NCBI RefSeq assembly: GCF_033153115.1
Contig: NW_026889753.1
Location: 1-64,000 of the forward strand
Source: Saccostrea echinata
Lineage: Eukaryota
Direction: 5' to 3'
DNA length: 64,000 bases
Positions 1-43,198 of this stretch are shown here, in pieces. The number at the start of each line of letters is the position of its first letter. Positions within the stretch are counted from its first letter, which is position 1. Made by a program: the position numbers and the translations under genes. The notes beneath the pieces are model-generated. The model had not been told where the DNA came from, made no database searches, and saw only the letters and a program-made list of their open reading frames with translations.

Positions 1-1565
1 ATTTGATAAAAACTTCAAATGGGATCCCAAGACATTTTGAAAAAAATGATTTTGTCCACGTTTTGCCTCAGATTTGTTTGCGGTAGCCGCTGTTTTGTAC
101 AAATATAACCTAGGATACAGTGTATCTAATGATCAGGTGCTTGGGATGTATAAAGCGCTCTACATTAAGAAAGCTCATAAACTTTATAAATGCATGTGTT
201 TGGTTATTTCAATTTTAATCCATTTTGTCTCGAGTTAACTCCATTCCAATTCTTAAGATAGGATCCTCTTTGAATCATGTCGGCGACTGTGACAACATTC
301 TGTGCAGTTTTATGCCCTTTTATTTCGTATTACTTAATACTTTTTATCTGGTCGCATAAAAAAATACGGGAAACATGGCTAACTTCTAAAATTGCATGCG
401 CCATGAATTGCAAATTGAAAGAGATATCAGCTCCAAAATGAAATATTTTATCGTTTTTCATCAGAACTTTCCTGAAAGACTCGTCATGAAAAAAAAATCT
501 CGGTGAATCATTTAATTTTTTTTGGTGCTGCATCACACCAGTATTCAATTGGGTTCTACATTCATAGCAAGATTACGCAAAAGTTACTCAAAGAAAGTTC
601 CGCTGATTTCTATTTTCAAATTCTGTAAATTAATGCTTCCTAAGCAAACCACATCGCAATTCAAAAAGGCGCTCAGCTTCATGGTCATCAAAGTCAATCA
701 AGTGCTTTAAAGTCAAGCGCAGAACCTAGCAACTCCCCTTCTTAAAAGAAAAAAAAATCATTTTGTCTCGTGTTTTAGTAAATCAAGTAGAAATCTGAAA
801 GGTGCACGTGGTTTTTATACGTCAATCTTCTCTCCTTCTCTCTCTTTAAATGTATATATATATTAAGTATATATGTAATCTTGGTGACATCTTGATCCGA
901 ATGGGGAGGGGGGGGGGTGTTAAGGAATTTGTCACCTCTTTCCTGAACCTCGAAAAAAAATAATAGAAATGCTTGAAAATCAAAAGAAAATTATTTTTTG
1001 TAACGAAGCATTTAAAAGTCGTACAAATTTGAATTTTCTTGTCCTAAGCAAGGATAAACCAATCAAAATGAACTTAGTCAATTGTAGTTCTAAATACAGA
1101 GATACCCTCTTTCCTTTTTATCTCTTTTGGTATCTTATTTTAGGCCTATATTATATTAATTTTGGAATCAATTATTAGGAATATCATAGCTTTAGAGGAA
1201 TTATCCAACTGGATAAAATGGAACTTTTTTTAGTGCGGCGCATGATGCAGCTTTTTGGGTGATGTGTAGACTACCTGTCAACATGTGAAACTGTGAATGT
1301 TTACGCTCAGTGTTCTGTCTTAAAAGCCGCATTTTTCCTCTCTCATTTGTTGGGGTCAATTTTTGTTTTAGTAATTAGCGGCCGAGAGTTCACTTAATTA
1401 ATGTAATCAAGTGTGCGAGAGCATTGGGGAAGCGCTAGTCTATGTTCGATCGTAAGTCTTGAAAATATCTACTTTTCGTTTCACTATTCACAACCAAAGG
1501 AATTGCAAGTCTGCATACAATAGAAAGTCTACTTATTCAATCGTAAGTCTTTGCCACCAGAAGCA

Positions 1566-1602
1566 TATAAAAGGAGGATTGAAACTGAGAAACAATCATA
1601 CT
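1566..1602 (+). promoter_or_regulatory. TATA box with initiator-like element of the array gene (present in every unit)
   Basis: TATAAAA at 1566-1572 and TCATACT at 1596-1602, about 30 bp downstream. The TATA box lies 89 bp before the ATG. Confidence 0.7.
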
Positions 1603-1654
1603 TTGTACAACGCTCTACACAAGTACTTCACACAACGTTAGTAGACACTATAGC

Positions 1655-3335
1655 ATGGCTGTACCACCAGGCGGTCCCATAGAGATTTGTTTCTCGTTTG
1701 ATACAACTGGCTCAATGTCAAGTTCTATCAATGCGGTTAAACAGAATGTCCAGGAAATGATTCAACGACTGCAAACGGATATCCCCGGTATTAGAATCGC
1801 TGTATTTGCTCACGGAGATTACTGTGACAGAGACTCATCTTATGTCACCAAGTATGTAGATTTTTCCACGGATCTGAACGAACTGTGTAACTGGGTCAAA
1901 AGCGTTGGGTCCACTGGAGGCGGGGATTCCGATGAGTGTTATGAGCTGGTCTTGCACCAGGTACAAACTTTGTCTTGGACACCTGGCACACAGAGGGCGC
2001 TGGTGATGATAGGAGATGCCCATCCTCATGACGTGAACTACCCAGACAACAAACTGAAATTGGACTGGAAGGAGGAAGTGGAAAAATTAGCAGTCATGGT
2101 AAGAAAATCATTTTAGTTTAAAGGTGAAAACTTAATGCCGTTTCTTTATTTCAAACCTTCACTGTTTTAGATTCCTGTCTTTCTTATTCAAGAGTATAAG
2201 TATATGTCGTCTGTATTTCAGGGTGTGCGAGTGTACGGTGTACAATGTAGAGCTTCTAGTGACAAAAGAACGAACGACTTCTACCAAACACTGGCCGATA
2301 AGACAGCTGGCAGACGAGTAGAACTGGAGCAGTTCTCCAATCTCTTTGACTTCATTATGGCCATCTGCTACAGAGAGCAAGGAGCAGAGTTCCTGGATAT
2401 CTATGAACAGGAAGTACGCGCCAGAGACGCTGGAATAGGTGTTCATAAGGATTTGAATGCTATGTTCGGAGCACTCAAAGACGATGAACCTTCCACATCT
2501 TCATCCAGCGTGGAGACTTCATCTTCCAAGTCCAGAACACTTCCCTACAAGCCGGCCCTGAAAAAGCTGCCATCTCTGACAAAAGCAGCCTCCATCACAA
2601 AGCTGAAGAAAAAGAGTACCTCCATTCACGCAGTGAGGAAAACAATCGTCAAAAAGACCGTTCCTTCTGCAATGGATAGAAAGAGAGCTAAACATCTAGC
2701 CATTTCATGCCAAAAGGTATTCAATCTCAAATACGTATCATTTTTCTTTCAATTCATGATATTCATATCTTGCATGTATATATAGTATTCAATATTAGAC
2801 TTTCATATAATAGGTACATAATTTATTTCAGCTAAACACACTAAGAAAGCTGAAGAGAGAAAATGTTGCAGAGACAAATTTTTCGATGAATAGAATTCAT
2901 TGGTCCCCGTGGGAACTAGTTATTTCTCCCATTAAACCAGAGGATGACTCGGTGTGGACAGAAAGACATCGAGGAAGAAAGGGTTTCAGAAAATCCACCG
3001 TCTGCGGAGGAAAGACATTCCCTGCCGCTGTGTACGAGTTCTCTGTGAGGAAACCATCTGATTCTAAACGTTATGTTACCTACTGTAAACTTTCCTCGGG
3101 ATTCACCAGTACACGATGCTGGGAATCTAGACTCTTGTCCGATTCTGACGTTCGATCTCAAGTGAACAAAGTGGTGTCTTTGGGATATTCTGTCTTTGTT
3201 CGTAGATGTTTGGTAACTGACTCTAACAAAAACACCATTAAGAAATCCCTTCTCAGATATGACTATGCATGGAGAAAAGTGCGAAATGTAAGAGACTCTC
3301 ACAGAAATATTCAGTTGATGGCAGCCTCAAATTAA
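1655..3335 (+). CDS. vWA domain + basic linker + ET/GIY-YIG-like domain protein, copy 1 (480 aa; exons 1655-2098, 2222-2716, 2832-3335)
   Basis: Three ORF-track fragments join in frame through two phase-0 introns: ATG|gtaaga...tttcag|GGT (123 bp) and AAG|gtattc...tttcag|CTA (115 bp). vWA motifs: FSFDTTGSM, FAHGDYCD, GGGDSDECYE, LVMIGDAHPH. C-terminal motifs: WSPW, AVYEF, GYSVFVR, YDYAW. Confidence 0.93.
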
Positions 3336-3424
3336 CATTGTATTCAAAATGTCTATTCTGTTGACATTTATTTTCACTTATACTGTTTTAGCGTTGACAA
3401 TTATTTGATTTTAATGTAAATGTA

Positions 3425-3430
3425 AATAAA
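3425..3430 (+). terminator. Polyadenylation signal of the array gene (present in every unit)
   Basis: AATAAA 90 bp after the stop codon, followed by a T/GT-rich downstream element (gattttatttgtgtg). Confidence 0.7.
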
Positions 3431-5410
3431 AGAAACAAAAAACATGAACTGATTTTATTTGTGTGAAAACTATGAAGGTTGAAGTATTTAAAAACGAAAG
3501 TGAGCGCAGTTAATACTTAGCTTTGAAAAAAAAAAATCATGATGGCGATAATGAAAAGAAAGAGATCGGGAGGAAGAAATGAGCAAGAAGTGTTTTACAA
3601 AGAGTAGTGTACAAACAGATATTATTTTGTTTGATTTCAATGTCTAAGGTTTGTTCTGAAACAAAATGATTTACATCAATCAAATAAATTTTATTCCTCA
3701 GTGTTAAACCATATCCATATTTAAAGCATTTATGCTAGCTATATATTTGATAAAAACTTCAAATGGGATCCCAAGACATTTTGAAAAAAATGATTTTGTC
3801 CACGTTTTGCCTCAGATTTGTTTGCGGTAGCCGCTGTTTTGTACAAATATAACCTAGGATACAGTGTATCTAATGATCAGGTGCTTGGGATATATAAAGC
3901 GCTCTACATTAAGAAAGCTCATAAACTTTATAAATGCATGTGTTTGGTTATTTCAATTTTAATCCATTTTGTCTCGAGTTAACTCCATTCCAATTCTTAA
4001 GATAGGATCCTCTTTGAATCATGTCGGCGACTGTGACAACATTCTGTGCAGTTTTATGCCCTTTTATTTCGTATTACTTAATACTTTTTATCTGGTCGCA
4101 TAAAAAAATACGGGAAACATGGCTAACTTCTAAAATTGCATGCGCCATGAATTGCAAATTGAAAGAGATATCAGCTCCAAAATGAAATATTTTATCGTTT
4201 TTCATCAGAACTTTCCTGAAAGACTCGTCATGAAAAAAAAATCTCGGTGAATCATTTAATTTTTTTTGGTGCTGCATCACACCAGTATTCAATTGGGTTC
4301 TACATTCATAGCAAGATTACGCCGCCTTTCAGGTAGATGTTACTCAAAGAAAGTTCCGCTGATTTCTATTTTCAAATTCTGTAAATTAATGCTTCCTAAG
4401 CAAACCACATCGCAATTCAAAAAGGCGCTCAGCTTCATGGTCATCAAAGTCAATCAAGTGCTTTAAAGTCAAGCGCAGAACCTAGCAACTCCCCTTCTTA
4501 AAAGAAAAAAAAATCATTTTGTCTCGTGTTTTAGTAAATCAAGTAGAAATCTGAAAGGTGCACGTGGTTTTTATACGTCAATCTTCTCTCCTTCTCTCTC
4601 TTTAAATGTATATATATATTAAGTATATATGTAATCTTGGTGACATCTTGATCCGAATGGGGAGGGGGGGGGGTTTTAAGGAATTTGTCACCTCTTTCCT
4701 GAACCTCGAAAAAAAATAATAGAAATGCTTGAAAATCAAAAGAAAATTATTTTTTGTAACGAAGCATTTAAAAGTCGTACAAATTTGAATTTTCTTGTCC
4801 TAAGCAAGGATAAACCAATCAAAATGAACTTAGTCAATTGTAGTTCTAAATACAGAGATACCCTCTTTCCTTTTTATCTCTTTTGGTATCTTATTTTAGG
4901 CCTATATTATATTAATTTTGGAATCAATTATTAGGAATATCATAGCTTTAGAGGAATTATCCAACTGGATAAAATGGAACTTTTTTTAGTGCGGCGCATG
5001 ATGCAGCTTTTTGGGTGATGTGTAGACTACCTGTCAACATGTGAAACTGTGAATGTTTACGCTCAGTGTTCTGTCTTAAAAGCCGCATTTTTCCTCTCTC
5101 ATTTGTTGGGGTCAATTTTTGTTTTAGTAATTAGCGGCCGAGAGTTCACTTAATTAATGTAATCAAGTGTGCGAGAGCATTGGGGAAGCGCTAGTCTATG
5201 TTCGATCGTAAGTCTTGAAAATATCTACTTTTCGTTTCACTATTCACAACCAAAGGAATTGCAAGTCTGCATACAATAGAAAGTCTACTTATTCAATCGT
5301 AAGTCTTTGCCACCAGAAGCATATAAAAGGAGGATTGAAACTGAGAAACAATCATACTTTGTACAACGCTCTACACAAGTACTTCACACAACGTTAGTAG
5401 ACACTATAGC

Positions 5411-7091
5411 ATGGCTGTACCACCAGGCGGTCCCATAGAGATTTGTTTCTCGTTTGATACAACTGGCTCAATGTCAAGTTCTATCAATGCGGTTAAACAG
5501 AATGTCCAGGAAATGATTCAACGACTGCAAACGGATATCCCCGGTATTAGAATCGCTGTATTTGCTCACGGAGATTACTGTGACAGAGACTCATCTTATG
5601 TCACCAAGTATGTAGATTTTTCCACGGATCTGAACGAACTGTGTAACTGGGTCAAAAGCGTTGGGTCCACTGGAGGCGGGGATTCCGATGAGTGTTATGA
5701 GCTGGTCTTGCACCAGGTACAAACTTTGTCTTGGACACCTGGCACACAGAGGGCGCTGGTGATGATAGGAGATGCCCATCCTCATGACGTGAACTACCCA
5801 GACAACAAACTGAAATTGGACTGGAAGGAGGAAGTGGAAAAATTAGCAGTCATGGTAAGAAAATCATTTTAGTTTAAAGGTGAAAACTTAATGCCGTTTC
5901 TTTATTTCAAACCTTCACTGTTTTAGATTCCTGTCTTTCTTATTCAAGAGTATAAGTATATGTCGTCTGTATTTCAGGGTGTGCGAGTGTACGGTGTACA
6001 ATGTAGAGCTTCTAGTGACAAAAGAACGAACGACTTCTACCAAACACTGGCCGATAAGACAGCTGGCAGACGAGTAGAACTGGAGCAGTTCTCCAATCTC
6101 TTTGACTTCATTATGGCCATCTGCTACAGAGAGCAAGGAGCAGAGTTCCTGGATATCTATGAACAGGAAGTACGCGCCAGAGACGCTGGAATAGGTGTTC
6201 ATAAGGATTTGAATGCTATGTTCGGAGCACTCAAAGACGATGAACCTTCCACATCTTCATCCAGCGTGGAGACTTCATCTTCCAAGTCCAGAACACTTCC
6301 CTACAAGCCGGCCCTGAAAAAGCTGCCATCTCTGACAAAAGCAGCCTCCATCACAAAGCTGAAGAAAAAGAGTACCTCCATTCACGCAGTGAGGAAAACA
6401 ATCGTCAAAAAGACCGTTCCTTCTGCAATGGATAGAAAGAGAGCTAAACATCTAGCCATTTCATGCCAAAAGGTATTCAATCTCAAATACGTATCATTTT
6501 TCTTTCAATTCATGATATTCATATCTTGCATGTATATATAGTATTCAATATTAGACTTTCATATAATAGGTACATAATTTATTTCAGCTAAACACACTAA
6601 GAAAGCTGAAGAGAGAAAATGTTGCAGAGACAAATTTTTCGATGAATAGAATTCATTGGTCCCCGTGGGAACTAGTTATTTCTCCCATTAAACCAGAGGA
6701 TGACTCGGTGTGGACAGAAAGACATCGAGGAAGAAAGGGTTTCAGAAAATCCACCGTCTGCGGAGGAAAGACATTCCCTGCCGCTGTGTACGAGTTCTCT
6801 GTGAGGAAACCATCTGATTCTAAACGTTATGTTACCTACTGTAAACTTTCCTCGGGATTCACCAGTACACGATGCTGGGAATCTAGACTCTTGTCCGATT
6901 CTGACGTTCGATCTCAAGTGAACAAAGTGGTGTCTTTGGGATATTCTGTCTTTGTTCGTAGATGTTTGGTAACTGACTCTAACAAAAACACCATTAAGAA
7001 ATCCCTTCTCAGATATGACTATGCATGGAGAAAAGTGCGAAATGTAAGAGACTCTCACAGAAATATTCAGTTGATGGCAGCCTCAAATTAA
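5411..7091 (+). CDS. vWA/ET-like protein copy 2 (exons 5411-5854, 5978-6472, 6588-7091)
   Basis: Translation and splice sites match copy 1. Confidence 0.92.
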
Positions 7092-9166
7092 CATTGTATT
7101 CAAAATGTCTATTCTGTTGACATTTATTTTCACTTATACTGTTTTAGCGTTGACAATTATTTGATTTTAATGTAAATGTAAATAAAAGAAACAAAAAACA
7201 TGAACTGATTTTATTTGTGTGAAAACTATGAAGGTTGAAGTATTTAAAAACGAAAGTGAGCGCAGTTAATACTTAGCTTTGAAAAAAAAAAATCATGATG
7301 GCGATAATGAAAAGAAAGAGATCGGGAGGAAGAAATGAGCAAGAAGTGTTTTACAAAGAGTAGTGTACAAACAGATATTATTTTGTTTGATTTCAATGTC
7401 TAAGGTTTGTTCTGAAACAAAATGATTTACATCAATCAAATAAATTTTATTCCTCAGTGTTAAACCATATCCATATTTAAAGCATTTATGCTAGCTATAT
7501 ATTTGATAAAAACTTCAAATGGGATCCCAAGACATTTTGAAAAAAATGATTTTGTCCACGTTTTGCCTCAGATTTGTTTGCGGTAGCCGCTGTTTTGTAC
7601 AAATATAACCTAGGATACAGTGTATCTAATGATCAGGTGCTTGGGATGTATAAAGCGCTCTACATTAAGAAAGCTCATAAACTTTATAAATGCATGTGTT
7701 TGGTTATTTCAATTTTAATCCATTTTGTCTCGAGTTAACTCCATTCCAATTCTTAAGATAGGATCCTCTTTGAATCATGTCGGCGACTGTGACAACATTC
7801 TGTGCAGTTTTATGCCCTTTTATTTCGTATTACTTAATACTTTTTATCTGGTCGCATAAAAAAATACGGGAAACATGGCTAACTTCTAAAATTGCATGCG
7901 CCATGAATTGCAAATTGAAAGAGATATCAGCTCCAAAATGAAATATTTTATCGTTTTTCATCAGAACTTTCCTGAAAGACTCGTCATGAAAAAAAAATCT
8001 CGGTGAATCATTTAATTTTTTTTGGTGCTGCATCACACCAGTATTCAATTGGGTTCTACATTCATAGCAAGATTACGCCGCCTTTCAGGTAGATGTTACT
8101 CAAAGAAAGTTCCGCTGATTTCTATTTTCAAATTCTGTAAATTAATGCTTCCTAAGCAAACCACATCGCAATTCAAAAAGGCGCTCAGCTTCATGGTCAT
8201 CAAAGTCAATCAAGTGCTTTAAAGTCAAGCGCAGAACCTAGCAACTCCCCTTCTTAAAAGAAAAAAAAATCATTTTGTCTCGTGTTTTAGTAAATCAAGT
8301 AGAAATCTGAAAGGTGCACGTGGTTTTTATACGTCAATCTTCTCTCCTTCTCTCTCTTTAAATGTATATATATATTAAGTATATATGTAATCTTGGTGAC
8401 ATCTTGATCCGAATGGGGAGGGGGGGGGGTGTTAAGGAATTTGTCACCTCTTTCCTGAACCTCGAAAAAAAATAATAGAAATGCTTGAAAATCAAAAGAA
8501 AATTATTTTTTGTAACGAAGCATTTAAAAGTCGTACAAATTTGAATTTTCTTGTCCTAAGCAAGGATAAACCAATCAAAATGAACTTAGTCAATTGTAGT
8601 TCTAAATACAGAGATACCCTCTTTCCTTTTTATCTCTTTTGGTATCTTATTTTAGGCCTATATTATATTAATTTTGGAATCAATTATTAGGAATATCATA
8701 GCTTTAGAGGAATTATCCAACTGGATAAAATGGAACTTTTTTTAGTGCGGCGCATGATGCAGCTTTTTGGGTGATGTGTAGACTACCTGTCAACATGTGA
8801 AACTGTGAATGTTTACGCTCAGTGTTCTGTCTTAAAAGCCGCATTTTTCCTCTCTCATTTGTTGGGGTCAATTTTTGTTTTAGTAATTAGCGGCCGAGAG
8901 TTCACTTAATTAATGTAATCAAGTGTGCGAGAGCATTGGGGAAGCGCTAGTCTATGTTCGATCGTAAGTCTTGAAAATATCTACTTTTCGTTTCACTATT
9001 CACAACCAAAGGAATTGCAAGTCTGCATACAATAGAAAGTCTACTTATTCAATCGTAAGTCTTTGCCACCAGAAGCATATAAAAGGAGGATTGAAACTGA
9101 GAAACAATCATACTTTGTACAACGCTCTACACAAGTACTTCACACAACGTTAGTAGACACTATAGC

Positions 9167-10847
9167 ATGGCTGTACCACCAGGCGGTCCCATAGAGATTT
9201 GTTTCTCGTTTGATACAACTGGCTCAATGTCAAGTTCTATCAATGCGGTTAAACAGAATGTCCAGGAAATGATTCAACGACTGCAAACGGATATCCCCGG
9301 TATTAGAATCGCTGTATTTGCTCACGGAGATTACTGTGACAGAGACTCATCTTATGTCACCAAGTATGTAGATTTTTCCACGGATCTGAACGAACTGTGT
9401 AACTGGGTCAAAAGCGTTGGGTCCACTGGAGGCGGGGATTCCGATGAGTGTTATGAGCTGGTCTTGCACCAGGTACAAACTTTGTCTTGGACACCTGGCA
9501 CACAGAGGGCGCTGGTGATGATAGGAGATGCCCATCCTCATGACGTGAACTACCCAGACAACAAACTGAAATTGGACTGGAAGGAGGAAGTGGAAAAATT
9601 AGCAGTCATGGTAAGAAAATCATTTTAGTTTAAAGGTGAAAACTTAATGCCGTTTCTTTATTTCAAACCTTCACTGTTTTAGATTCCTGTCTTTCTTATT
9701 CAAGAGTATAAGTATATGTCGTCTGTATTTCAGGGTGTGCGAGTGTACGGTGTACAATGTAGAGCTTCTAGTGACAAAAGAACGAACGACTTCTACCAAA
9801 CACTGGCCGATAAGACAGCTGGCAGACGAGTAGAACTGGAGCAGTTCTCCAATCTCTTTGACTTCATTATGGCCATCTGCTACAGAGAGCAAGGAGCAGA
9901 GTTCCTGGATATCTATGAACAGGAAGTACGCGCCAGAGACGCTGGAATAGGTGTTCATAAGGATTTGAATGCTATGTTCGGAGCACTCAAAGACGATGAA
10001 CCTTCCACATCTTCATCCAGCGTGGAGACTTCATCTTCCAAGTCCAGAACACTTCCCTACAAGCCGGCCCTGAAAAAGCTGCCATCTCTGACAAAAGCAG
10101 CCTCCATCACAAAGCTGAAGAAAAAGAGTACCTCCATTCACGCAGTGAGGAAAACAATCGTCAAAAAGACCGTTCCTTCTGCAATGGATAGAAAGAGAGC
10201 TAAACATCTAGCCATTTCATGCCAAAAGGTATTCAATCTCAAATACGTATCATTTTTCTTTCAATTCATGATATTCATATCTTGCATGTATATATAGTAT
10301 TCAATATTAGACTTTCATATAATAGGTACATAATTTATTTCAGCTAAACACACTAAGAAAGCTGAAGAGAGAAAATGTTGCAGAGACAAATTTTTCGATG
10401 AATAGAATTCATTGGTCCCCGTGGGAACTAGTTATTTCTCCCATTAAACCAGAGGATGACTCGGTGTGGACAGAAAGACATCGAGGAAGAAAGGGTTTCA
10501 GAAAATCCACCGTCTGCGGAGGAAAGACATTCCCTGCCGCTGTGTACGAGTTCTCTGTGAGGAAACCATCTGATTCTAAACGTTATGTTACCTACTGTAA
10601 ACTTTCCTCGGGATTCACCAGTACACGATGCTGGGAATCTAGACTCTTGTCCGATTCTGACGTTCGATCTCAAGTGAACAAAGTGGTGTCTTTGGGATAT
10701 TCTGTCTTTGTTCGTAGATGTTTGGTAACTGACTCTAACAAAAACACCATTAAGAAATCCCTTCTCAGATATGACTATGCATGGAGAAAAGTGCGAAATG
10801 TAAGAGACTCTCACAGAAATATTCAGTTGATGGCAGCCTCAAATTAA
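9167..10847 (+). CDS. vWA/ET-like protein copy 3 (exons 9167-9610, 9734-10228, 10344-10847)
   Basis: Translation and splice sites match copy 1. Confidence 0.92.
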
Positions 10848-31710: not shown

Positions 31711-33391
31711 ATGGCTGTACCACCAGGCGGTCCCATAGAGATTTGTTTCTCGTTTGATACAACTGGCTCAATGTCAAGTTCTATCAATGCGGTTAAACAG
31801 AATGTCCAGGAAATGATTCAACGACTGCAAACGGATATCCCCGGTATTAGAATCGCTGTATTTGCTCACGGAGATTACTGTGACAGAGACTCATCTTATG
31901 TCACCAAGTATGTAGATTTTTCCACGGATCTGAACGAACTGTGTAACTGGGTCAAAAGCGTTGGGTCCACTGGAGGCGGGGATTCCGATGAGTGTTATGA
32001 GCTGGTCTTGCACCAGGTACAAACTTTGTCTTGGACACCTGGCACACAGAGGGCGCTGGTGATGATAGGAGATGCCCATCCTCATGACGTGAACTACCCA
32101 GACAACAAACTGAAATTGGACTGGAAGGAGGAAGTGGAAAAATTAGCAGTCATGGTAAGAAAATCATTTTAGTTTAAAGGTGAAAACTTAATGCCGTTTC
32201 TTTATTTCAAACCTTCACTGTTTTAGATTCCTGTCTTTCTTATTCAAGAGTATAAGTATATGTCGTCTGTATTTCAGGGTGTGCGAGTGTACGGTGTACA
32301 ATGTAGAGCTTCTAGTGACAAAAGAACGAACGACTTCTACCAAACACTGGCCGATAAGACAGCTGGCAGACGAGTAGAACTGGAGCAGTTCTCCAATCTC
32401 TTTGACTTCATTATGGCCATCTGCTACAGAGAGCAAGGAGCAGAGTTCCTGGATATCTATGAACAGGAAGTACGCGCCAGAGACGCTGGAATAGGTGTTC
32501 ATAAGGATTTGAATGCTATGTTCGGAGCACTCAAAGACGATGAACCTTCCACATCTTCATCCAGCGTGGAGACTTCATCTTCCAAGTCCAGAACACTTCC
32601 CTACAAGCCGGCCCTGAAAAAGCTGCCATCTCTGACAAAAGCAGCCTCCATCACAAAGCTGAAGAAAAAGAGTACCTCCATTCACGCAGTGAGGAAAACA
32701 ATCGTCAAAAAGACCGTTCCTTCTGCAATGGATAGAAAGAGAGCTAAACATCTAGCCATTTCATGCCAAAAGGTATTCAATCTCAAATACGTATCATTTT
32801 TCTTTCAATTCATGATATTCATATCTTGCATGTATATATAGTATTCAATATTAGACTTTCATATAATAGGTACATAATTTATTTCAGCTAAACACACTAA
32901 GAAAGCTGAAGAGAGAAAATGTTGCAGAGACAAATTTTTCGATGAATAGAATTCATTGGTCCCCGTGGGAACTAGTTATTTCTCCCATTAAACCAGAGGA
33001 TGACTCGGTGTGGACAGAAAGACATCGAGGAAGAAAGGGTTTCAGAAAATCCACCGTCTGCGGAGGAAAGACATTCCCTGCCGCTGTGTACGAGTTCTCT
33101 GTGAGGAAACCATCTGATTCTAAACGTTATGTTACCTACTGTAAACTTTCCTCGGGATTCACCAGTACACGATGCTGGGAATCTAGACTCTTGTCCGATT
33201 CTGACGTTCGATCTCAAGTGAACAAAGTGGTGTCTTTGGGATATTCTGTCTTTGTTCGTAGATGTTTGGTAACTGACTCTAACAAAAACACCATTAAGAA
33301 ATCCCTTCTCAGATAAGACTATGCATGGAGAAAAGTGCGAAATGTAAGAGACTCTCACAGAAATATTCAGTTGATGGCAGCCTCAAATTAA
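31711..33391 (+). pseudogene. vWA/ET-like copy 9 with premature stop Y456* (exons 31711-32154, 32278-32772, 32888-33316)
   Basis: TAT>TAA at 33314-33316 removes the last 25 aa, including the YDYAW motif. It could yield a truncated protein rather than a null, or be a sequence error. Confidence 0.75.
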
Positions 33392-35465
33392 CATTGTATT
33401 CAAAATGTCTATTCTGTTGACATTTATTTTCACTTATACTGTTTTAGCGTTGACAATTATTTGATTTTAATGTAAATGTAAATAAAAGAAACAAAAAACA
33501 TGAACTGATTTTATTTGTGTGAAAACTATGAAGGTTGAAGTATTTAAAAACGAAAGTGAGCGCAGTTAATACTTAGCTTTGAAAAAAAAAATCATGATGG
33601 CGATAATGAAAAGAAAGAGATCGGGAGGAAGAAATGAGCAAGAAGTGTTTTACAAAGAGTAGTGTACAAACAGATATTATTTTGTTTGATTTCAATGTCT
33701 AAGGTTTGTTCTGAAACAAAATGATTTACATCAATCAAATAAATTTTATTCCTCAGTGTTAAACCATATCCATATTTAAAGCATTTATGCTAGCTATATA
33801 TTTGATAAAAACTTCAAATGGGATCCCAAGACATTTTGAAAAAAATGATTTTGTCCACGTTTTGCCTCAGATTTGTTTGCGGTAGCCGCTGTTTTGTACA
33901 AATATAACCTAGGATACAGTGTATCTAATGATCAGGTGCTTGGGATGTATAAAGCGCTCTACATTAAGAAAGCTCATAAACTTTATAAATGCATGTGTTT
34001 GGTTATTTCAATTTTAATCCATTTTGTCTCGAGTTAACTCCATTCCAATTCTTAAGATAGGATCCTCTTTGAATCATGTCGGCGACTGTGACAACATTCT
34101 GTGCAGTTTTATGCCCTTTTATTTCGTATTACTTAATACTTTTTATCTGGTCGCATAAAAAAATACGGGAAACATGGCTAACTTCTAAAATTGCATGCGC
34201 CATGAATTGCAAATTGAAAGAGATATCAGCTCCAAAATGAAATATTTTATCGTTTTTCATCAGAACTTTCCTGAAAGACTCGTCATGAAAAAAAAATCTC
34301 GGTGAATCATTTAATTTTTTTTGGTGCTGCATCACACCAGTATTCAATTGGGTTCTACATTCATAGCAAGATTACGCCGCCTTTCAGGTAGATGTTACTC
34401 AAAGAAAGTTCCGCTGATTTCTATTTTCAAATTCTGTAAATTAATGCTTCCTAAGCAAACCACATCGCAATTCAAAAAGGCGCTCAGCTTCATGGTCATC
34501 AAAGTCAATCAAGTGCTTTAAAGTCAAGCGCAGAACCTAGCAACTCCCCTTCTTAAAAGAAAAAAAAATCATTTTGTCTCGTGTTTTAGTAAATCAAGTA
34601 GAAATCTGAAAGGTGCACGTGGTTTTTATACGTCAATCTTCTCTCCTTCTCTCTCTTTAAATGTATATATATATTAAGTATATATGTAATCTTGGTGACA
34701 TCTTGATCCGAATGGGGAGGGGGGGGGGTGTTAAGGAATTTGTCACCTCTTTCCTGAACCTCGAAAAAAAATAATAGAAATGCTTGTAAATCAAAAGAAA
34801 ATTATTTTTTGTAACGAAGCATTTAAAAGTCGTACAAATTTGAATTTTCTTGTCCTAAGCAAGGATAAACCAATCAAAATGAACTTAGTCAATTGTAGTT
34901 CTAAATACAGAGATACCCTCTTTCCTTTTTATCTCTTTTGGTATCTTATTTTAGGCCTATATTATATTAATTTTGGAATCAATTATTAGGAATATCATAG
35001 CTTTAGAGGAATTATCCAACTGGATAAAATGGAACTTTTTTTAGTGCGGCGCATGATGCAGCTTTTTGGGTGATGTGTAGACTACCTGTCAACATGTGAA
35101 ACTGTGAATGTTTACGCTCAGTGTTCTGTCTTAAAAGCCGCATTTTTCCTCTCTCATTTGTTGGGGTCAATTTTTGTTTTAGTAATTAGCGGCCGAGAGT
35201 TCACTTAATTAATGTAATCAAGTGTGCGAGAGCATTGGGGAAGCGCTAGTCTATGTTCGATCGTAAGTCTTGAAAATATCTACTTTTCGTTTCACTATTC
35301 ACAACCAAAGGAATTGCAAGTCTGCATACAATAGAAAGTCTACTTATTCAATCGTAAGTCTTTGCCACCAGAAGCATATAAAAGGAGGATTGAAACTGAG
35401 AAACAATCATACTTTGTACAACGCTCTACACAAGTACTTCACACAACGTTAGTAGACACTATAGC

Positions 35466-37146
35466 ATGGCTGTACCACCAGGCGGTCCCATAGAGATTTG
35501 TTTCTCGTTTGATACAACTGGCTCAATGTCAAGTTCTATCAATGCGGTTAAACAGAATGTCCAGGAAATGATTCAACGACTGCAAACGGATATCCCCGGT
35601 ATTAGAATCGCTGTATTTGCTCACGGAGATTACTGTGACAGAGACTCATCTTATGTCACCAAGTATGTAGATTTTTCCACGGATCTGAACGAACTGTGTA
35701 ACTGGGTCAAAAGCGTTGGGTCCACTGGAGGCGGGGATTCCGATGAGTGTTATGAGCTGGTCTTGCACCAGGTACAAACTTTGTCTTGGACACCTGGCAC
35801 ACAGAGGGCGCTGGTGATGATAGGAGATGCCCATCCTCATGACGTGAACTACCCAGACAACAAACTGAAATTGGACTGGAAGGAGGAAGTGGAAAAATTA
35901 GCAGTCATGGTAAGAAAATCATTTTAGTTTAAAGGTGAAAACTTAATGCCGTTTCTTTATTTCAAACCTTCACTGTTTTAGATTCCTGTCTTTCTTATTC
36001 AAGAGTATAAGTATATGTCGTCTGTATTTCAGGGTGTGCGAGTGTACGGTGTACAATGTAGAGCTTCTAGTGACAAAAGAACGAACGACTTCTACCAAAC
36101 ACTGGCCGATAAGACAGCTGGCAGACGAGTAGAACTGGAGCAGTTCTCCAATCTCTTTGACTTCATTATGGCCATCTGCTACAGAGAGCAAGGAGCAGAG
36201 TTCCTGGATATCTATGAACAGGAAGTACGCGCCAGAGACGCTGGAATAGGTGTTCATAAGGATTTGAATGCTATGTTCGGAGCACTCAAAGACGATGAAC
36301 CTTCCACATCTTCATCCAGCGTGGAGACTTCATCTTCCAAGTCCAGAACACTTCCCTACAAGCCGGCCCTGAAAAAGCTGCCATCTCTGACAAAAGCAGC
36401 CTCCATCACAAAGCTGAAGAAAAAGAGTACCTCCATTCACGCAGTGAGGAAAACAATCGTCAAAAAGACCGTTCCTTCTGCAATGGATAGAAAGAGAGCT
36501 AAACATCTAGCCATTTCATGCCAAAAGGTATTCAATCTCAAATACGTATCATTTTTCTTTCAATTCATGATATTCATATCTTGCATGTATATATAGTATT
36601 CAATATTAGACTTTCATATAATAGGTACATAATTTATTTCAGCTAAACACACTAAGAAAGCTGAAGAGAGAAAATGTTGCAGAGACAAATTTTTCGATGA
36701 ATAGAATTCATTGGTCCCCGTGGGAACTAGTTATTTCTCCCATTAAACCAGAGGATGACTCGGTGTGGACAGAAAGACATCGAGGAAGAAAGGGTTTCAG
36801 AAAATCCACCGTCTGCGGAGGAAAGACATTCCCTGCCGCTGTGTACGAGTTCTCTGTGAGGAAACCATCTGATTCTAAACGTTATGTTACCTACTGTAAA
36901 CTTTCCTCGGGATTCACCAGTACACGATGCTGGGAATCTAGACTCTTGTCCGATTCTGACGTTCGATCTCAAGTGAACAAAGTGGTGTCTTTGGGATATT
37001 CTGTCTTTGTTCGTAGATGTTTGGTAACTGACTCTAACAAAAACACCATTAAGAAATCCCTTCTCAGATATGACTATGCATGGAGAAAAGTGCGAAATGT
37101 AAGAGACTCTCACAGAAATATTCAGTTGATGGCAGCCTCAAATTAA
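35466..37146 (+). CDS. vWA/ET-like protein copy 10 (exons 35466-35909, 36033-36527, 36643-37146)
   Basis: Translation matches copy 1. Confidence 0.92.
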
Positions 37147-39221
37147 CATTGTATTCAAAATGTCTATTCTGTTGACATTTATTTTCACTTATACTGTTTT
37201 AGCGTTGACAATTATTTGATTTTAATGTAAATGTAAATAAAAGAAACAAAAAACATGAACTGATTTTATTTGTGTGAAAACTATGAAGGTTGAAGTATTT
37301 AAAAACGAAAGTGAGCGCAGTTAATACTTAGCTTTGAAAAAAAAAAATCATGATGGCGATAATGAAAAGAAAGAGATCGGGAGGAAGAAATGAGCAAGAA
37401 GTGTTTTACAAAGAGTAGTGTACAAACAGATATTATTTTGTTTGATTTCAATGTCTAAGGTTTGTTCTGAAACAAAATGATTTACATCAATCAAATAAAT
37501 TTTATTCCTCAGTGTTAAACCATATCCATATTTAAAGCATTTATGCTAGCTATATATTTGATAAAAACTTCAAATGGGATCCCAAGACATTTTGAAAAAA
37601 ATGATTTTGTCCACGTTTTGCCTCAGATTTGTTTGCGGTAGCCGCTGTTTTGTACAAATATAACCTAGGATACAGTGTATCTAATGATCAGGTGCTTGGG
37701 ATGTATAAAGCGCTCTACATTAAGAAAGCTCATAAACTTTATAAATGCATGTGTTTGGTTATTTCAATTTTAATCCATTTTGTCTCGAGTTAACTCCATT
37801 CCAATTCTTAAGATAGGATCCTCTTTGAATCATGTCGGCGACTGTGACAACATTCTGTGCAGTTTTATGCCCTTTTATTTCGTATTACTTAATACTTTTT
37901 ATCTGGTCGCATAAAAAAATACGGGAAACATGGCTAACTTCTAAAATTGCATGCGCCATGAATTGCAAATTGAAAGAGATATCAGCTCCAAAATGAAATA
38001 TTTTATCGTTTTTCATCAGAACTTTCCTGAAAGACTCGTCATGAAAAAAAAATCTCGGTGAATCATTTAATTTTTTTTGGCGCTGCATCACACCAGTATT
38101 CAATTGGGTTCTACATTCATAGCAAGATTACGCCGCCTTTCAGGTAGATATTACTCAAAGAAAGTTCCGCTGATTTCTATTTTCAAATTCTGTAAATTAA
38201 TGCTTCCTAAGCAAACCACATCGCAATTCAAAAAGGCGCACAGCTTCATGGTCATCAAAGTCAATCAAGTGCTTTAAAGTCAAGCGCAGAACCTAGCAAC
38301 TCCCCTTCTTAAAAGAAAAAAAAATCATTTTGTCTCGTGTTTTAGTAAATCAAGTAGAAATCTGAAAGGTGCACGTGGTTTTTATACGTCAATCTTCTCT
38401 CCTTCTCTCTCTTTAAATGTATATATATATTAAGTATATATGTAATCTTGGTGACATCTTGATCCGAATGGGGAGGGGGGGGGGGTGTTAAGGAATTTGT
38501 CACCTCTTTTCTGAACCTCGAAAAAAATAATAGAAATGCTTGAAAATCAAAAGAAAATTATTTTTTGTAACGAAGCATTTAAAAGTCGTACAAATTTGCA
38601 TTTTCTTGTCCTAAGCAAGGATAAACCAATCAAAATGAACTTAGTCAATTGTAGTTCTAAATACAGAGATACCCTCTTTCCTTTTTATCTCTTTTGGTAT
38701 CTTATTTTAGGCCTATATTATATTAATTTTGGAATCAATTATTAGGAATATCATAGCTTTAGAGGAATTATCCAACTGGATAAAATGGGACTTTTTTTAG
38801 TGCGGCGCATGATGCAGCTTTTTGGGTGATGTGTAGACTACCTGTCAACATGTGAAACTGTGAATGTTTACGCTCAGTGTTCTGTCTTAAAAGCCGCATT
38901 TTTCCTCTCTCATTTGTTGGGGTCAATTTTTGTTTCATTAATTAGCGGCCGAGAGTTCACTTAATTAATGTAATCAAGTGTGCGAGAGCATTGGGGAAGC
39001 GCTAGTCTATGTTCGATCGTAAGTCTTGAAAATATCTACTTTTCGTTTCACTATTCACAACCAAAGGAATTGCAAGTCTGCATACAATAGAAAGTCTACT
39101 TATTCAATCGTAAGTCTTTGCCACCAGAAGCATATAAAAGGAGGATTGAAACTGAGAAACAATCATACTTTGTACAACGCTCTACACAAGTACTTCACAC
39201 AACGTTAGTAGACACTATAGC

Positions 39222-40902
39222 ATGGCTGTACCACCAGGCGGTCCCATAGAGATTTGTTTCTCGTTTGATACAACTGGCTCAATGTCAAGTTCTATCAATG
39301 CGGTTAAACAGAATGTCCAGGAAATGATTCAACGACTGCAAACGGATATCCCCGGTATTAGAATCGCTGTATTTGCTCACGGAGATTACTGTGACAGAGA
39401 CTCATCTTATGTCACCAAGTATGTAGATTTTTCCACGGATCTGAACGAACTGTGTAACTGGGTCAAAAGCGTTGGGTCCACTGGAGGCGGGGATTCCGAT
39501 GAGTGTTATGAGCTGGTCTTGCACCAGGTACAAACTTTGTCTTGGACACCTGGCACACAGAGGGCGCTGGTGATGATAGGAGATGCCCATCCTCATGACG
39601 TGAACTACCCAGACAACAAACTGAAATTGGACTGGAAGGAGGAAGTGGAAAAATTAGCAGTCATGGTAAGAAAATCATTTTAGTTTAAAGGTGAAAACTT
39701 AATGCCGTTTCTTTATTTCAAACCTTCACTGTTTTAGATTCCTGTCTTTCTTATTCAAGAGTATAAGTATATGTCGTCTGTATTTCAGGGTGTGCGAGTG
39801 TACGGTGTACAATGTAGAGCTTCTAGTGACAAAAGAACGAACGACTTCTACCAAACACTGGCCGATAAGACAGCTGGCAGACGAGTAGAACTGGAGCAGT
39901 TCTCCAATCTCTTTGACTTCATTATGGCCATCTGCTACAGAGAGCAAGGAGCAGAGTTCCTGGATATCTATGAACAGGAAGTACGCGCCAGAGACGCTGG
40001 AATAGGTGTTCATAAGGATTTGAATGCTATGTTCGGAGCACTCAAAGACGATGAACCTTCCACATCTTCATCCAGCGTGGAGGCTTCATCTTCCAAGTCC
40101 AGAACACTTCCCTACAAGCCGGCCCTGAAAAAGCTGTCATCTCTGACAAAAGCAGCCTCCATCACAAAGCTGAAGAAAAAGAGTACCTCCATTCACGCAG
40201 TGAGGAAAACAATCGTCAAAAAGACCGTTCCTTCTGCAATGGATAGAAAGAGAGCTAAACATCTAGCCATTTCATGCCAAAAGGTATTCAATCTCAAATA
40301 CGTATCATTTTTCTTTCAATTCATGATATTCATATCTTGCATGTATATATAGTATTCAATATTAGACTTTCATATAATAGGTACATAATTTATTTCAGCT
40401 AAACATACTAAGAAAGCTGAAGAGAGAAAATGTTGCAGAGACAAATTTTTCGATGAATAGAATTCATTGGTCCCCGTGGGAACTAGTTATTTCTCCCATT
40501 AAACCAGAGGATGACTCGGTGTGGACAGAAAGACATCGAGGAAGAAAGGGTTTCAGAAAATCCACCGTCTGCGGAGGAAAGACATTCCCTGCCGCTGTGT
40601 ACGAGTTCTCTGTGAGGAAACCATCTGATTCTAAACGTTATGTTACCTACTGTAAACTTTCCTCGGGATTCACCAGTACACGATGCTGGGAATCTAGACT
40701 CTTGTCCGATTCTGACGTTCGATCTCAAGTGAACAAAGTGGTGTCTTTGGGATATTCTGTCTTTGTTCGTAGATGTTTGGTAACTGACTCTAACAAAAAC
40801 ACCATTAAGAAATCCCTTCTCAGATATGACTATGCATGGAGAAAAGTGCGAAATGTAAGAGACTCTCACAGAAATATTCAGTTGATGGCAGCCTCAAATT
40901 AA
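39222..40902 (+). CDS. vWA/ET-like protein copy 11, terminal copy with T247A, P265S and T316I (exons 39222-39665, 39789-40283, 40399-40902)
   Basis: VETSS>VEASS, KLPSL>KLSSL, and ACA>ATA at 40405-40407. Splice sites are intact. Confidence 0.91.
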
Positions 40903-41271
40903 CATTGTATTCAAAATGTCTATTCTGTTGACATTTATTTTCACTTATACTGTTTTAGCGTTGACAATTATTTTGTTTTAATGTAAAATGTAAATAAAAG
41001 AAACAAAAAACATGAACTGATTTTATTTGTGTGAAAACTATGAAGGTTGAAGTATTTAAAAACGAAAGTGAGCGCACTTAATACTTAGCTTTGAAAAAAA
41101 AACTTATGATATTGATATGGCGATAATGAAAAGAAAGAGATCGGGGGAAAGAAATAAGCAGAGTGTTTTACAAAGAGTAGTATACAAACAGATATTATTT
41201 TGTTTGATTTCAATGTTTAAACATGTCTGAAACAAAGTGATTTACATCAATCAAATAAATTTTATTCTTCT

Positions 41272-42335: not shown

Positions 42336-43086
42336 TTTACGTTCTTCCAGTCTACTTTTTCAGCGACGTCTGGTTTCTGAAGATTAAATTGCAGAAAAAT
42401 GTACATGTATGTTTTCCGAGTTGCAGGAGGGGATATATCACATTTTGTGGGTGGATATGCATATGGTAATGCATACTAATAAATAAATAAACAACATAAG
42501 TCTATCTATAAACTTTGATTTTATTTTTATTTATTTTTAATCACTGTACGTTGCAGTGGTCTACTTGTTTTCAGCGGATAAATATTTTCTAGACTTACTG
42601 AAAGACATTGCATTCTGATATTTTTAGTACACCTTTGCCAATGACTTTGGACATGATCACTATTGGTTCTTCAACGCAAGGTTAAAAGGTTATCTTTAAT
42701 CACTTATTCTTGTTCCCGAGAACTTGGTAAGAACTTTAGTGTCTTGTTTTCTGACTTCAAAAAGAAGTGTTAGACCAATAGTTCAAAGGAAATTTTAAGA
42801 AAGTGGAATCCACACAAGTCATGCCTGTATATATATTTTAGATAAATCTTGTGGATTTCTCTTAATTATGAAAGCCTTTGATATTTTTGAATCGTTTTCT
42901 TTTACATATAATTTTTTTAATCAACAGTAATGTTATATTATAACTTTTTCTTGAGGATTTAATGACGTATAGAACGTTTTCAATATTGTAGGAGTAAGGA
43001 TGCATTTCAATATAGAAACATAAGGACGATAAACAAAACTGTTCACCGTCTGAAACATTTTGTCCTGTTTTGATAAATAATAGTGA

Positions 43087-43089
<3 letters not shown>

Positions 43090-43133
<44 letters not shown>
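43090..43133. repeat. (CT)n microsatellite
   Basis: About 22 perfect CT units just upstream of the acceptor at 43176. Confidence 0.97.
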
Positions 43134-43135
<2 letters not shown>

Positions 43136-43198
43136 GAGGTTGTGTGTGCGTGTGCATTTTTGTTCTTTTTTTTCAGAGTTTGACCTAATTGTTACGTC

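What the first reader, a model, noticed from the sequence alone, without database searches (positions are those of the whole stretch)
1..41270. rDNA/histone-style homogenised array of a complete intron-containing protein gene
Seen: at least 11 units, each with TATA box, two introns and a poly(A) signal. Spacer and introns are as conserved as exons, with only a few differences per 3.7 kb. I saw no transposase, RT or terminal repeats. Inference: very recent amplification or ongoing concerted evolution. This pattern is known for dosage-selected or conflict genes, for example DUX4/D4Z4-type macrosatellites and ampliconic germline genes. Copy number probably varies between individuals and may be under-represented in the assembly.
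Basis: partly seen in the sequence, partly recalled or inferred. Interest (0 to 1): 0.75.

Follow-up and report, generated by a model that had tools for sequence, protein, structure and literature searches.

The report
Near-identical tandem gene array in oyster
A rock-oyster contig begins with at least eleven almost identical head-to-tail copies of a complete, transcribed gene for an uncharacterised two-domain protein, and related oysters also carry many near-identical copies of this gene.

Summary
Window 1-41323 holds 11 head-to-tail units of about 3756 bp. Ten of them differ by about 3 substitutions per unit, and introns and spacer are as uniform as exons. The eleventh, edge unit is more diverged. 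All 11 units keep the TATA box, ATG, both GT/AG introns, the stop codon and AATAAA.

The array starts at base 1 of a 12.4-Mb contig of Saccostrea echinata, so the assembly cuts it and 11 is a minimum. RefSeq already annotates the genes as "uncharacterized protein" (LOC133179332 and others, 480 aa).

Contigs from four public runs (three studies) lie only on the exons. They skip both introns exactly, so the gene is transcribed and spliced as modelled.

The protein has an N-terminal VWA domain with an intact MIDAS motif, a disordered linker and a C-terminal GIY-YIG-fold domain. It belongs to a family found across lophotrochozoans.

The orthologue is also multi-copy in Ostrea edulis and Magallana gigas. 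Copies cluster by species (98-99.6% identical within a species, 77-84% between genera), the signature of concerted evolution or of repeated amplification.

Copy number and variation between individuals could not be tested, because no raw DNA reads were served. The D4Z4 analogy fails. This is a new member of a known kind, of moderate interest.

The parts
1..41323 (+). Tandem array of 11 units (U1-U11), period 3755-3762 bp, cut on the left by the contig end
1655..3335 (+). U1 gene: exons 1655-2098, 2222-2716 and 2832-3335 (with stop); TATA at 1566-1573; AATAAA at 3425. It encodes the 480-aa protein P0255
   Evidence: introns confirmed on U11 by spliced contigs
5411..7091 (+). U2 gene (= P0255)
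9167..10847 (+). U3 gene (= P0255)
12923..14603 (+). U4 gene (= P0255)
16679..18359 (+). U5 gene (= P0255)
20435..22115 (+). U6 gene (= P0255)
24197..25877 (+). U7 gene (= P0255)
27955..29635 (+). U8 gene, one Leu>Gln change in exon 1 (= P0253)
31711..33391 (+). U9 gene, with an in-frame TAA in exon 3 that shortens the product to 455 aa (= P0254)
35466..37146 (+). U10 gene (= P0255)
39222..40902 (+). U11 (edge) gene, three amino-acid changes (= P0199). Spliced contigs of four runs were laid here
40903..42334 (+). Decaying right edge: 3' spacer at 90-92% identity (to 41270), two degenerate copies of the 3'UTR region, then 5'-spacer pieces 41935-42062 (80%) and 42278-42334 (86%). No gene follows
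1041..1332 (.). Interspersed repeat of about 300 bp inside every spacer (coordinates for U1), about 74-78% identical to copies on many contigs

Best explanation
This is a genuine, transcribed tandem array of a whole protein-coding gene in the oyster Saccostrea echinata. Each 3.76-kb unit carries promoter, three exons, two introns, poly(A) signal and about 2.1 kb of spacer. The assembly breaks inside the array, so the 11 units are a minimum. The units are kept nearly identical by unequal crossing-over and gene conversion between units. The interior is homogenised, sometimes in two-unit steps, while the edge unit and an old partial unit beyond it escape and decay. The same orthologue is multi-copy and homogeneous within species in Ostrea and Magallana. 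The multi-copy state is therefore most likely old and maintained, which points to selection for high dose or fast turnover of the product (inferred). The product is an intracellular protein of a lophotrochozoan-wide family. It has an N-terminal VWA domain with an intact metal-ion (MIDAS) site for binding a partner, a disordered Ser/Lys-rich linker, and a C-terminal GIY-YIG-fold domain. My best guess is that it binds or cuts nucleic acid in defence or genome surveillance. That last step is inference only.
For: Array and uniformity. Contig end: the window is C4:1-64000 and no other contig holds the unit (13 of 13 candidates scored: 11 in the array, one paralogue 2.28 Mb away, one weak match on C20). 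Units are individually marked: a 12-bp deletion in U1, poly-G length differences in U6-U8 and U11, private SNPs in U8 and U9, and an alternating G/A and G/T pattern in U1-U6. This argues against a looped assembly path. Unequal exchange: U2=U4 and U3=U5 have 0 differences, an exact 7.5-kb dimer duplication. Edge effect: U11 differs at 51-55 sites and keeps the paralogue's base at sites where U1-U10 share a derived base (40083, 40974-5). Older spacer pieces (80-86%) lie beyond it. Transcription: in 4 of 4 runs laid (3 studies, 2 organism labels), contigs cover only exons and skip 39664>39788 and 40281>40397 with GT..AG. Depth is 0 on the spacer. Homogenisation faster than allele divergence: transcripts in X4, X8 and X6 differ from the assembled U1-U10 consensus at 12 listed sites in about 1.6 kb, 6 of them the paralogue's base. 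Units within the array differ by about 0.08%. Functional constraint: array versus paralogue dS 0.245, dN 0.044, ratio 0.18. Other oysters: 7 distinct 476-aa proteins from at least 8 LOC ids on one O. edulis chromosome, and at least 10 accessions of 478 aa on one M. gigas chromosome. In the tree, copies cluster by species (M. gigas 98/91, O. edulis 100/100, S. echinata array 100/99). Identity is 98-99.6% within a species and 77-84% between genera. Domains: VWA_4 at 42.1 bits (cut-off 27) and PF19239 at 21.8 bits (cut-off 21.4). 28 of 56 family members match PF19239 and 2 of 56 match PF01541. The C-terminal model has pLDDT 93, and its four best structural matches are all GIY-YIG nucleases (T4 EndoII Z 7.7, 109 residues, 3.2 A). 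D16, T18, S20 and D121 are invariant in 60 sequences.
Against: No raw DNA reads were available, so copy number rests on the assembly alone. Tandem arrangement in Ostrea and Magallana is inferred only from many distinct, near-consecutive accessions on one chromosome, not seen in DNA. Species-wise clustering is equally produced by independent recent amplifications. The congener S. cucullata shows only one array-type protein, though on a 19.8-kb contig. All 5 coding differences among the 11 units are non-synonymous or nonsense (4 + 1, 0 synonymous), so there is no sign of purifying selection among copies, although the number is small. Foldseek gave no PDB match at E<=0.001 for the C-terminal domain. 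The helix that carries the catalytic Glu in canonical GIY-YIG enzymes shows no conserved acidic residue; the placement of that helix is recalled, not tested. Nuclease activity is therefore doubtful. No paper or experiment links the family to any function.
Confidence: 0.62

Rival explanations
1. A young, haplotype-specific copy-number expansion. One recent burst of tandem duplication occurred in S. echinata, with independent bursts in other oysters, and there is no long-term concerted evolution or selection for dose.
For: Units differ by only about 0.08%. There are 0 synonymous and 5 non-synonymous or nonsense differences, and one unit is truncated, which fits relaxed constraint on redundant copies. 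S. cucullata shows only one array-type protein. Transcript unitigs of other individuals are long and unbroken (760-1128 nt), which would also fit a single copy in those animals.
Against: The diverged edge unit and the 80-86% spacer relics show older duplicates at the same locus. Three genera all show many near-identical copies, which would need repeated independent bursts of the same gene.
Confidence: 0.28
2. Assembly artefact. A one- or two-copy gene was over-expanded at a contig end by the assembler.
For: The array lies at the very start of a contig, where assemblies are least reliable. U2=U4 and U3=U5 are exactly identical. No DNA reads could be laid.
Against: Units carry distinct private variants in a fixed order, including indels. 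The edge unit grades into unique flank. Unitigs of run X1 break at positions where the assembled units differ, for example next to 40083, as expected if several variants are expressed. The orthologues are multi-copy in independently assembled genomes.
Confidence: 0.06
3. A mobile or selfish unit. The array was built by a transposon or rolling-circle element, or by the encoded GIY-YIG-fold protein cutting its own locus.
For: The C-terminal domain has the fold of homing and restriction nucleases. One distant relative (P0017) combines five such domains with a transposase-type HTH. The spacer holds an interspersed repeat.
Against: There is no transposase, RT or Rep ORF (largest spacer ORF 72 aa) and no terminal repeats. 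Complete units occur only at this locus. The paralogue shares the gene and a promoter piece but not the spacer. Gene-level dN/dS is 0.18, as for a host gene.
Confidence: 0.04

Closest known systems
Tandemly repeated gene arrays under concerted evolution (histone gene repeats, the U2 snRNA RNU2 array, rDNA)
   Same: Head-to-tail units of a few kb each carry a complete transcription unit plus spacer. The spacer is as uniform as the gene. Edge units are diverged, there are multi-unit duplications, and copies cluster by species.
   Different: The gene has introns and a poly(A) signal and encodes an ordinary cytoplasmic-type protein of unknown function. Known copy number is 11 or more, not hundreds. 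Tandem order in other species has not been seen in DNA.
Coding macrosatellites and ampliconic genes (D4Z4/DUX4, TSPY, CT47, recalled from general knowledge)
   Same: A kb-scale unit with an ORF, high identity between units, and likely copy-number polymorphism.
   Different: D4Z4 carries an intronless retrogene that is normally silenced, and only the last unit has a poly(A) site. Here every unit has two introns and its own AATAAA, and spliced transcripts were found in 4 of 4 runs laid.
[quoted passage not shown]
   Same: Same length and architecture. 1746 proteins reach E<=0.001 with a family member as query. The S. echinata copies are RefSeq LOC133179332 to LOC133179344.
   Different: Most listed species show one to a few diverged paralogues. 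The oyster orthologue stands out by many near-identical copies. None of the scanned members carried a RING domain.
GIY-YIG nucleases (T4 EndoII, Hpy188I, UvrC N-terminal domain, I-TevI)
   Same: Same fold: the four best matches out of 48,161 chains are all GIY-YIG nucleases. The Pfam family is PF19239.
   Different: There is no sequence-level match to any solved GIY-YIG chain. The family's invariant residues are Y68, E69, R124 and Y145-A146-W147 (exon-3 numbering), not the canonical Tyr/Tyr/Arg/Glu/Asn set as I recall it. Activity has not been tested.
VWA proteins of large DNA viruses and jumbo phages
   Same: The VWA module (residues ~9-243) is 30-49% identical to ORFs on 153 viral contigs, with shared motifs FDTTGSM and AHGDYCD.
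   Different: The viral proteins have another C-terminal domain (hhalign probability 0.5%) and sometimes SWIM and RING domains. No GIY-YIG-like domain was seen in the three I read.

Membership tests
Concertedly evolving tandem gene array | Head-to-tail units of constant period, each with a complete gene | tested here: met
   11 units, 3755-3762 bp. All signals are present in 11 of 11 units and the ORF is intact in 10 of 11.
Concertedly evolving tandem gene array | Non-coding parts as uniform as coding parts, and far more alike than paralogues | tested here: met
   U1-U10 differ by 0.08% overall, with 0 variable intron sites. Against the paralogue, introns are 65-69% and exons 90-95.5% identical.
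Concertedly evolving tandem gene array | Edge units escape homogenisation | tested here: met
   U11 differs at 51-55 sites against at most 6 among the others. Decayed spacer relics lie beyond it.
Concertedly evolving tandem gene array | Copies cluster by species, not by position, across species | tested here: met
   Protein tree of 29 rows: M. gigas 98/91, O. edulis 100/100, S. echinata array 100/99. Proteins only; independent amplification is not excluded.
Concertedly evolving tandem gene array | Tandem arrangement and homologous spacer in the other species | not testable with these tools
   No eukaryote genome other than G000 can be read. Only accession order and a shared chromosome are known.
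Concertedly evolving tandem gene array | Copy number confirmed by read depth and variable between individuals | not testable with these tools
   All 14 runs listed are kept as contigs, and the 4 laid proved to be spliced RNA.
D4Z4/DUX4-type macrosatellite | Intronless ORF in each unit, with a poly(A) site only distal to the last unit | tested here: not met
   Two introns and an AATAAA in 11 of 11 units. Introns are confirmed by spliced contigs.
Transposable element or TE-borne array | Transposase, RT or Rep ORF, terminal repeats, dispersed full copies | tested here: not met
   Spacer ORFs are at most 72 aa. Only 15-19 nt inverted matches were found. Full units occur only at this locus.
VWA domain with MIDAS site | Pfam VWA match above cut-off and the D-x-T/S-x-S ... 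D metal-site residues | tested here: met
   VWA_4 at 42.1 bits (cut-off 27) and VWA at 25.8 (23.8). D16, T18, S20 and D121 are invariant in 60 sequences. Foldseek matches integrin beta I-like domains at E 1e-9.
GIY-YIG nuclease superfamily | GIY-YIG fold | tested here: met
   Model pLDDT 93. VIA-align: T4 EndoII Z 7.7, Hpy188I 4.2, UvrC N-terminal domain 3.9, I-TevI 3.8. Foldseek is weak (best E 0.14).
GIY-YIG nuclease superfamily | Catalytic Tyr, Tyr, Arg, Glu and Asn residues | tested here: inconclusive
   Y68, a Tyr on the second strand and R124 are conserved, and E69 is invariant. No conserved acid lies in the helix after strand 3. No residue-level alignment to a solved enzyme could be obtained.

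The most novel reading that the evidence does not exclude
The array is a long-lived locus that predates the split of Saccostrea, Ostrea and Magallana and evolves in concert. That would make it a protein-coding, intron-containing 'macrosatellite' kept multi-copy for tens of millions of years. Its copy number would then set the dose of a VWA plus GIY-YIG-fold protein that acts on foreign or mobile nucleic acid, and could be a variable resistance locus in oysters.
Probability: 0.15. Interest if true: 0.7.

Novelty: new member of a known kind. Interest (0 to 1): 0.45.

Why it matters
Whole-gene arrays kept near-identical in spacer and introns are textbook for rRNA, histone and snRNA genes. They are rare for ordinary intron-containing protein genes. 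This one appears in three oyster genera, so it offers a tractable case of concerted evolution or recurrent amplification of a protein gene. It also marks an unstudied VWA plus GIY-YIG-fold family as one whose dose seems to matter in oysters. In practical terms it flags an assembly break and a probable copy-number-variable locus in an aquaculture species.

Tried and rejected
TRF found nothing because its longest period is 500; k-mer spacing replaced it.

Sequence searches of the PDB gave nothing usable. Exon 1 gave at best collagen VI VWA at E 0.023. The A1 profile gave 0 matches. The A2 profile gave one chance match. NCBIfam gave no meaningful match. The protein atlas returned only the protein's own mollusc cluster at 0.98 and generic VWA clusters at 0.80 or below.

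The literature gave no direct link.
- No paper holds any of six LOC or UniProt ids. Supplementary tables are closed, and expression tables there may list these genes.
- 'finger protein R811' plus 'oyster' found one paper (PMC6401078). I saw only a passage: a table row with negative fold changes for a mussel contig of that name, whose membership in this family I cannot check.
- 'GIY-YIG' + 'vWA' + 'mollusc' found 3 papers. I read passages of PMC6215123, on a mussel 'GIY-YIG DC' transcript with no link shown to this family.
- 'concerted evolution' + oyster + tandem + protein-coding gave 24 papers. From their listing (15 shown), none is on this gene.
- 'PF19239' gave one paper, but the term is not in its main text.
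- The S. echinata genome search gave a listing only.

I looked for an RNA gene in the spacer, since 5S, snRNA or tRNA genes are linked to such arrays in bivalves (recalled). There was no Rfam match at E<=0.1 and no tRNA.

A 114-bp, 97-98% match of unit 31-144 on C14 is isolated, with nothing else of the unit around it. The C15 relative shares no DNA similarity with the unit. No decayed twelfth gene lies downstream: tblastn of P0255 on 41001-64000 gave only one chance hit at E 4.3. The viral VWA proteins' C-terminal domain is not related to the oyster one.

The read-depth test was not possible. All runs are kept as contigs, and the four laid are spliced RNA.

Rows left out of the tree: the fragmentary O. 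edulis members P0264-P0270, the M. gigas members P0279 and P0282-P0284, and the 11 of 26 members of the M. gigas cluster that one search did not list.

All searches with window sequence were made exon by exon. For full-length work I used the RefSeq proteins that the tools returned (P0255 and others). I checked their identity with the exon translations piece by piece. dN/dS was computed per exon, and only the counts were summed.

Full report
WHAT IS THERE

The window is the first 64 kb of a 12,378,987-bp contig (G000:C4:1-64000) of a 923-Mb assembly in 425 pieces. The RefSeq protein names returned for its products identify the species as Saccostrea echinata. The length of the longest contig holding those proteins equals the length of C4.

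Distances between repeated 25-mers peak sharply at 3756 bp. Repeated words occur about 10-11 times up to about 41 kb and then stop. The window has no N. A unique 30-mer anchor occurs 11 times at spacings of 3755-3762 bp. TRF was blind to this because of its 500-bp period limit.

ANATOMY OF A UNIT (U1 coordinates)

- TATA-like CATATAAAAGG at 1564-1574 and ATG at 1655.
- Exon 1 at 1655-2098, then an intron GTAAGA...TTTCAG.
- Exon 2 at 2222-2716, then an intron GTATTC...TTTCAG.
- Exon 3 at 2832-3335 (TAA), with AATAAA at 3425.
- About 2.1 kb of spacer.

All these signals are present in 11 of 11 units. Their separate translations (148 + 165 + 167 aa) are each contained, in full and adding to the right length, in RefSeq proteins that the tools returned:
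- 8 of 11 units (U1-U7, U10) encode P0255 (480 aa).
- U8 encodes P0253 (one Leu>Gln change).
- U9 encodes P0254 (455 aa, because of an in-frame TAA in exon 3).
- U11 encodes P0199 (three substitutions).

So the genes are already annotated as 'uncharacterized protein LOC133179332 / 179340 / 179342 / 179343 / 179344'.

UNIFORMITY

Among U1-U10 the mean pairwise difference is 2.96 substitutions per 3.75 kb (0.08%, maximum 6). U2 and U4 are identical, and so are U3 and U5. That is an exact duplication of a two-unit, 7.5-kb block.

Variable substitution sites among U1-U10 number 9 in the 5' spacer, 2 in exons and none in the 238 intron bases. U11, at the edge, differs from every other unit at 51-55 sites. 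Of these, 38 lie in its last 309 bp, where the array grades into the flank.

Beyond U11 the order is as follows:
- the 3' spacer at 90-92% identity, to 41270;
- two degenerate copies of the 3'UTR region;
- pieces of 5' spacer in the right order (41935-42062 at 80%; 42278-42334 at 86%).

No gene follows them. The locus therefore carries older, decaying duplicates next to a homogenised core.

The five coding differences among the 11 copies are four non-synonymous changes and one nonsense change. None is synonymous.

IS IT AN ARTEFACT OR A MOBILE ELEMENT?

Complete units exist nowhere else in the assembly. The gene probe found 13 candidates and all 13 were scored: 11 in the array, one paralogue at C4:2,279,018-2,280,693, and one weak match on C20.

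The units carry private markers in a fixed order: a 12-bp deletion in U1, poly-G length differences, SNPs private to U6, U8, U9 and U10, and an alternating two-state pattern over U1-U6. A looped assembly path would not produce these markers.

The spacer has no ORF above 72 aa, no terminal repeats, and no Rfam family or tRNA. It does contain an interspersed repeat of about 300 bp with 975 first-look candidates in the genome.

Because the array runs into base 1 of the contig, 11 is a lower bound. I could not measure depth, because every run offered is kept as contigs.

EXPRESSION

I laid four runs (three studies, two organism labels) on window 38800-44799. In all four:
- contigs lie on the three exons only;
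- they skip 39664>39788 and 40281>40397 with GT..AG;
- they begin at 39187-39190 at the earliest and end by about 40996-41009;
- the spacer has zero depth.

The runs are therefore RNA, and the gene is transcribed and spliced exactly as modelled.

The transcript contigs of X4, X8 and X6 are unbroken over 760-1128 nt. They differ from the assembled U1-U10 consensus at 12 listed sites, about 0.8%. At 6 of these 12 sites they carry the paralogue's base. For example, at 40506 all 11 assembled units have A, while the paralogue and the transcripts of all four runs have G.

Derived bases have therefore spread through every unit of the assembled haplotype. Units within it are about ten times more alike than array haplotypes are between animals.

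In X1, unitigs break next to 40083, where U11 and U1-U10 differ. One contig carries the paralogue's bases at 11 sites of exon 1.

HISTORY

The paralogue 2.28 Mb away (P0256, 476 aa) shares the gene with its introns and an 86-bp promoter piece, but not the spacer. Exons are 90-95.5% identical and introns 65-69%. Per-exon Nei-Gojobori counts sum to dS 0.245, dN 0.044 and a ratio of 0.18, so the gene is under purifying selection. More distant relatives lie on C20, C15 and C9.

The 90%-identity clusters of the orthologues show many distinct full-length proteins on a single chromosome in other oysters:
- O. edulis has 7 sequences of 476 aa from at least 8 LOC ids on one chromosome of 109,476,225 bp.
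- M. gigas has at least 10 accessions of 478 aa on one chromosome of 61,469,542 bp.

A maximum-likelihood tree of 29 proteins groups the copies by species, with support of 98/91, 100/100 and 100/99. Identity is 98-99.6% within a species and 77-84% between genera. The S. echinata paralogue pairs with one S. cucullata protein at 93/97. The rows I left out are named under Tried and rejected.

This is the pattern of concerted evolution. Repeated independent amplification would give the same tree, and I could not see the DNA arrangement in the other species.

THE PROTEIN

Exon 1 matches VWA_4 (42.1 bits, cut-off 27). Exon 3 matches PF19239 'GIY_YIG_domain', just above its cut-off (21.8 against 21.4). 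Exon 2 matches nothing.

An exhaustive HMMER search with exon 3 found 140 representative clusters. Of 10 longer hits scanned, 5 have an N-terminal VWA domain and 4 match PF19239.

With one of those hits as query, 1746 proteins reach E<=0.001. Among the 120 listed, those that carry a species name come mostly from molluscs, with a nemertean, a brachiopod and an annelid as well. Most are named only 'uncharacterized' or 'VWFA domain-containing'.

In a 60-sequence alignment the MIDAS residues D16, T18, S20 and D121 are invariant. So are E382, R437 and W460 in the C-terminal domain.

The full-length model shows three parts:
- a confident VWA fold at residues 1-235, whose nearest solved folds are integrin beta I-like domains at E 1e-9;
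- a disordered stretch at 239-312;
- a compact C-terminal domain.

Modelled alone, the C-terminal domain reaches pLDDT 93. Its four best matches among 48,161 chains are all GIY-YIG nucleases: T4 EndoII (Z 7.7, 109 residues, 3.2 A), Hpy188I (4.2), UvrC N-terminal domain (3.9) and I-TevI (3.8). Foldseek alone gave nothing at E<=0.001.

28 of 56 family members match PF19239 and 2 match the canonical PF01541. I could not align the catalytic residues to a solved enzyme. The helix that carries the catalytic Glu in canonical enzymes (recalled) shows no conserved acid here. Whether the domain cuts nucleic acid is open.

The VWA module alone is 30-49% identical to ORFs on 153 large viral contigs, but these have a different C-terminal domain.

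VERDICT

The D4Z4 comparison is not supported, because the gene has introns, each unit has its own poly(A) signal, and the gene is expressed.

This is a new example of a known kind of locus, a concertedly evolving or recurrently amplified tandem gene array. The gene family is uncharacterised, and the genes themselves are already in RefSeq. No paper in the searched library mentions them, and supplementary tables could not be seen.

Copy number, its variation between animals and the protein's function remain to be measured.

Noticed in passing
window 43197-44799 (+): A neighbouring spliced gene has exons 43197-43254, 43538-43680, 44364-44514 and 44708 onwards. The first two introns read GT..AG; the third joint reads GT..AT with two extra letters. 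It was seen only in run X6. The exon translations show a signal-peptide-like start and EF-hand loops. Pfam EF-hand matches are below cut-off, as expected for single exons.
   Followed up: partly
window 1041-1332 and the same place in every unit: An interspersed repeat of about 300 bp lies about 230 bp upstream of the TATA box. It is 73-78% identical to copies on many contigs (975 first-look candidates). Its type (SINE or MITE) was not determined.
   Followed up: no
L005-L084 (viral contigs); read: L006 2986-4047, L009 2992-4077, L033 2398-4140: The VWA module of this animal family is 30-49% identical to ORFs on 153 large viral contigs (jumbo-phage or giant-virus size). These ORFs carry a different conserved C-terminal domain, and in a giant-virus MAG also SWIM and RING domains. 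A virus-host exchange of this module is possible.
   Followed up: partly
window 42194-42238: A motif of about 35-45 nt is shared by several unrelated transcript contigs in all four runs, with loose ends on both sides. It is probably a small repeat carried in many transcripts.
   Followed up: no
G000:C14:1540123-1540236 (L003 5124-5237, minus strand): An isolated 114-bp piece is 97-98% identical to unit positions 31-144. Nothing else of the unit lies around it, and its origin is unexplained.
   Followed up: partly
window 39305-39664 (run X1, record 2): One transcript contig carries the paralogue's bases at 11 sites of exon 1 (39335-39446) and array bases elsewhere. It could be a chimeric unitig, or an unassembled or gene-converted copy.
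   Followed up: partly
P0017 (991 aa): A distant relative has five PF19239 domains in tandem plus a transposase-type HTH (HTH_Tnp_1). This hints that the domain also occurs in a mobile-element context.
   Followed up: no
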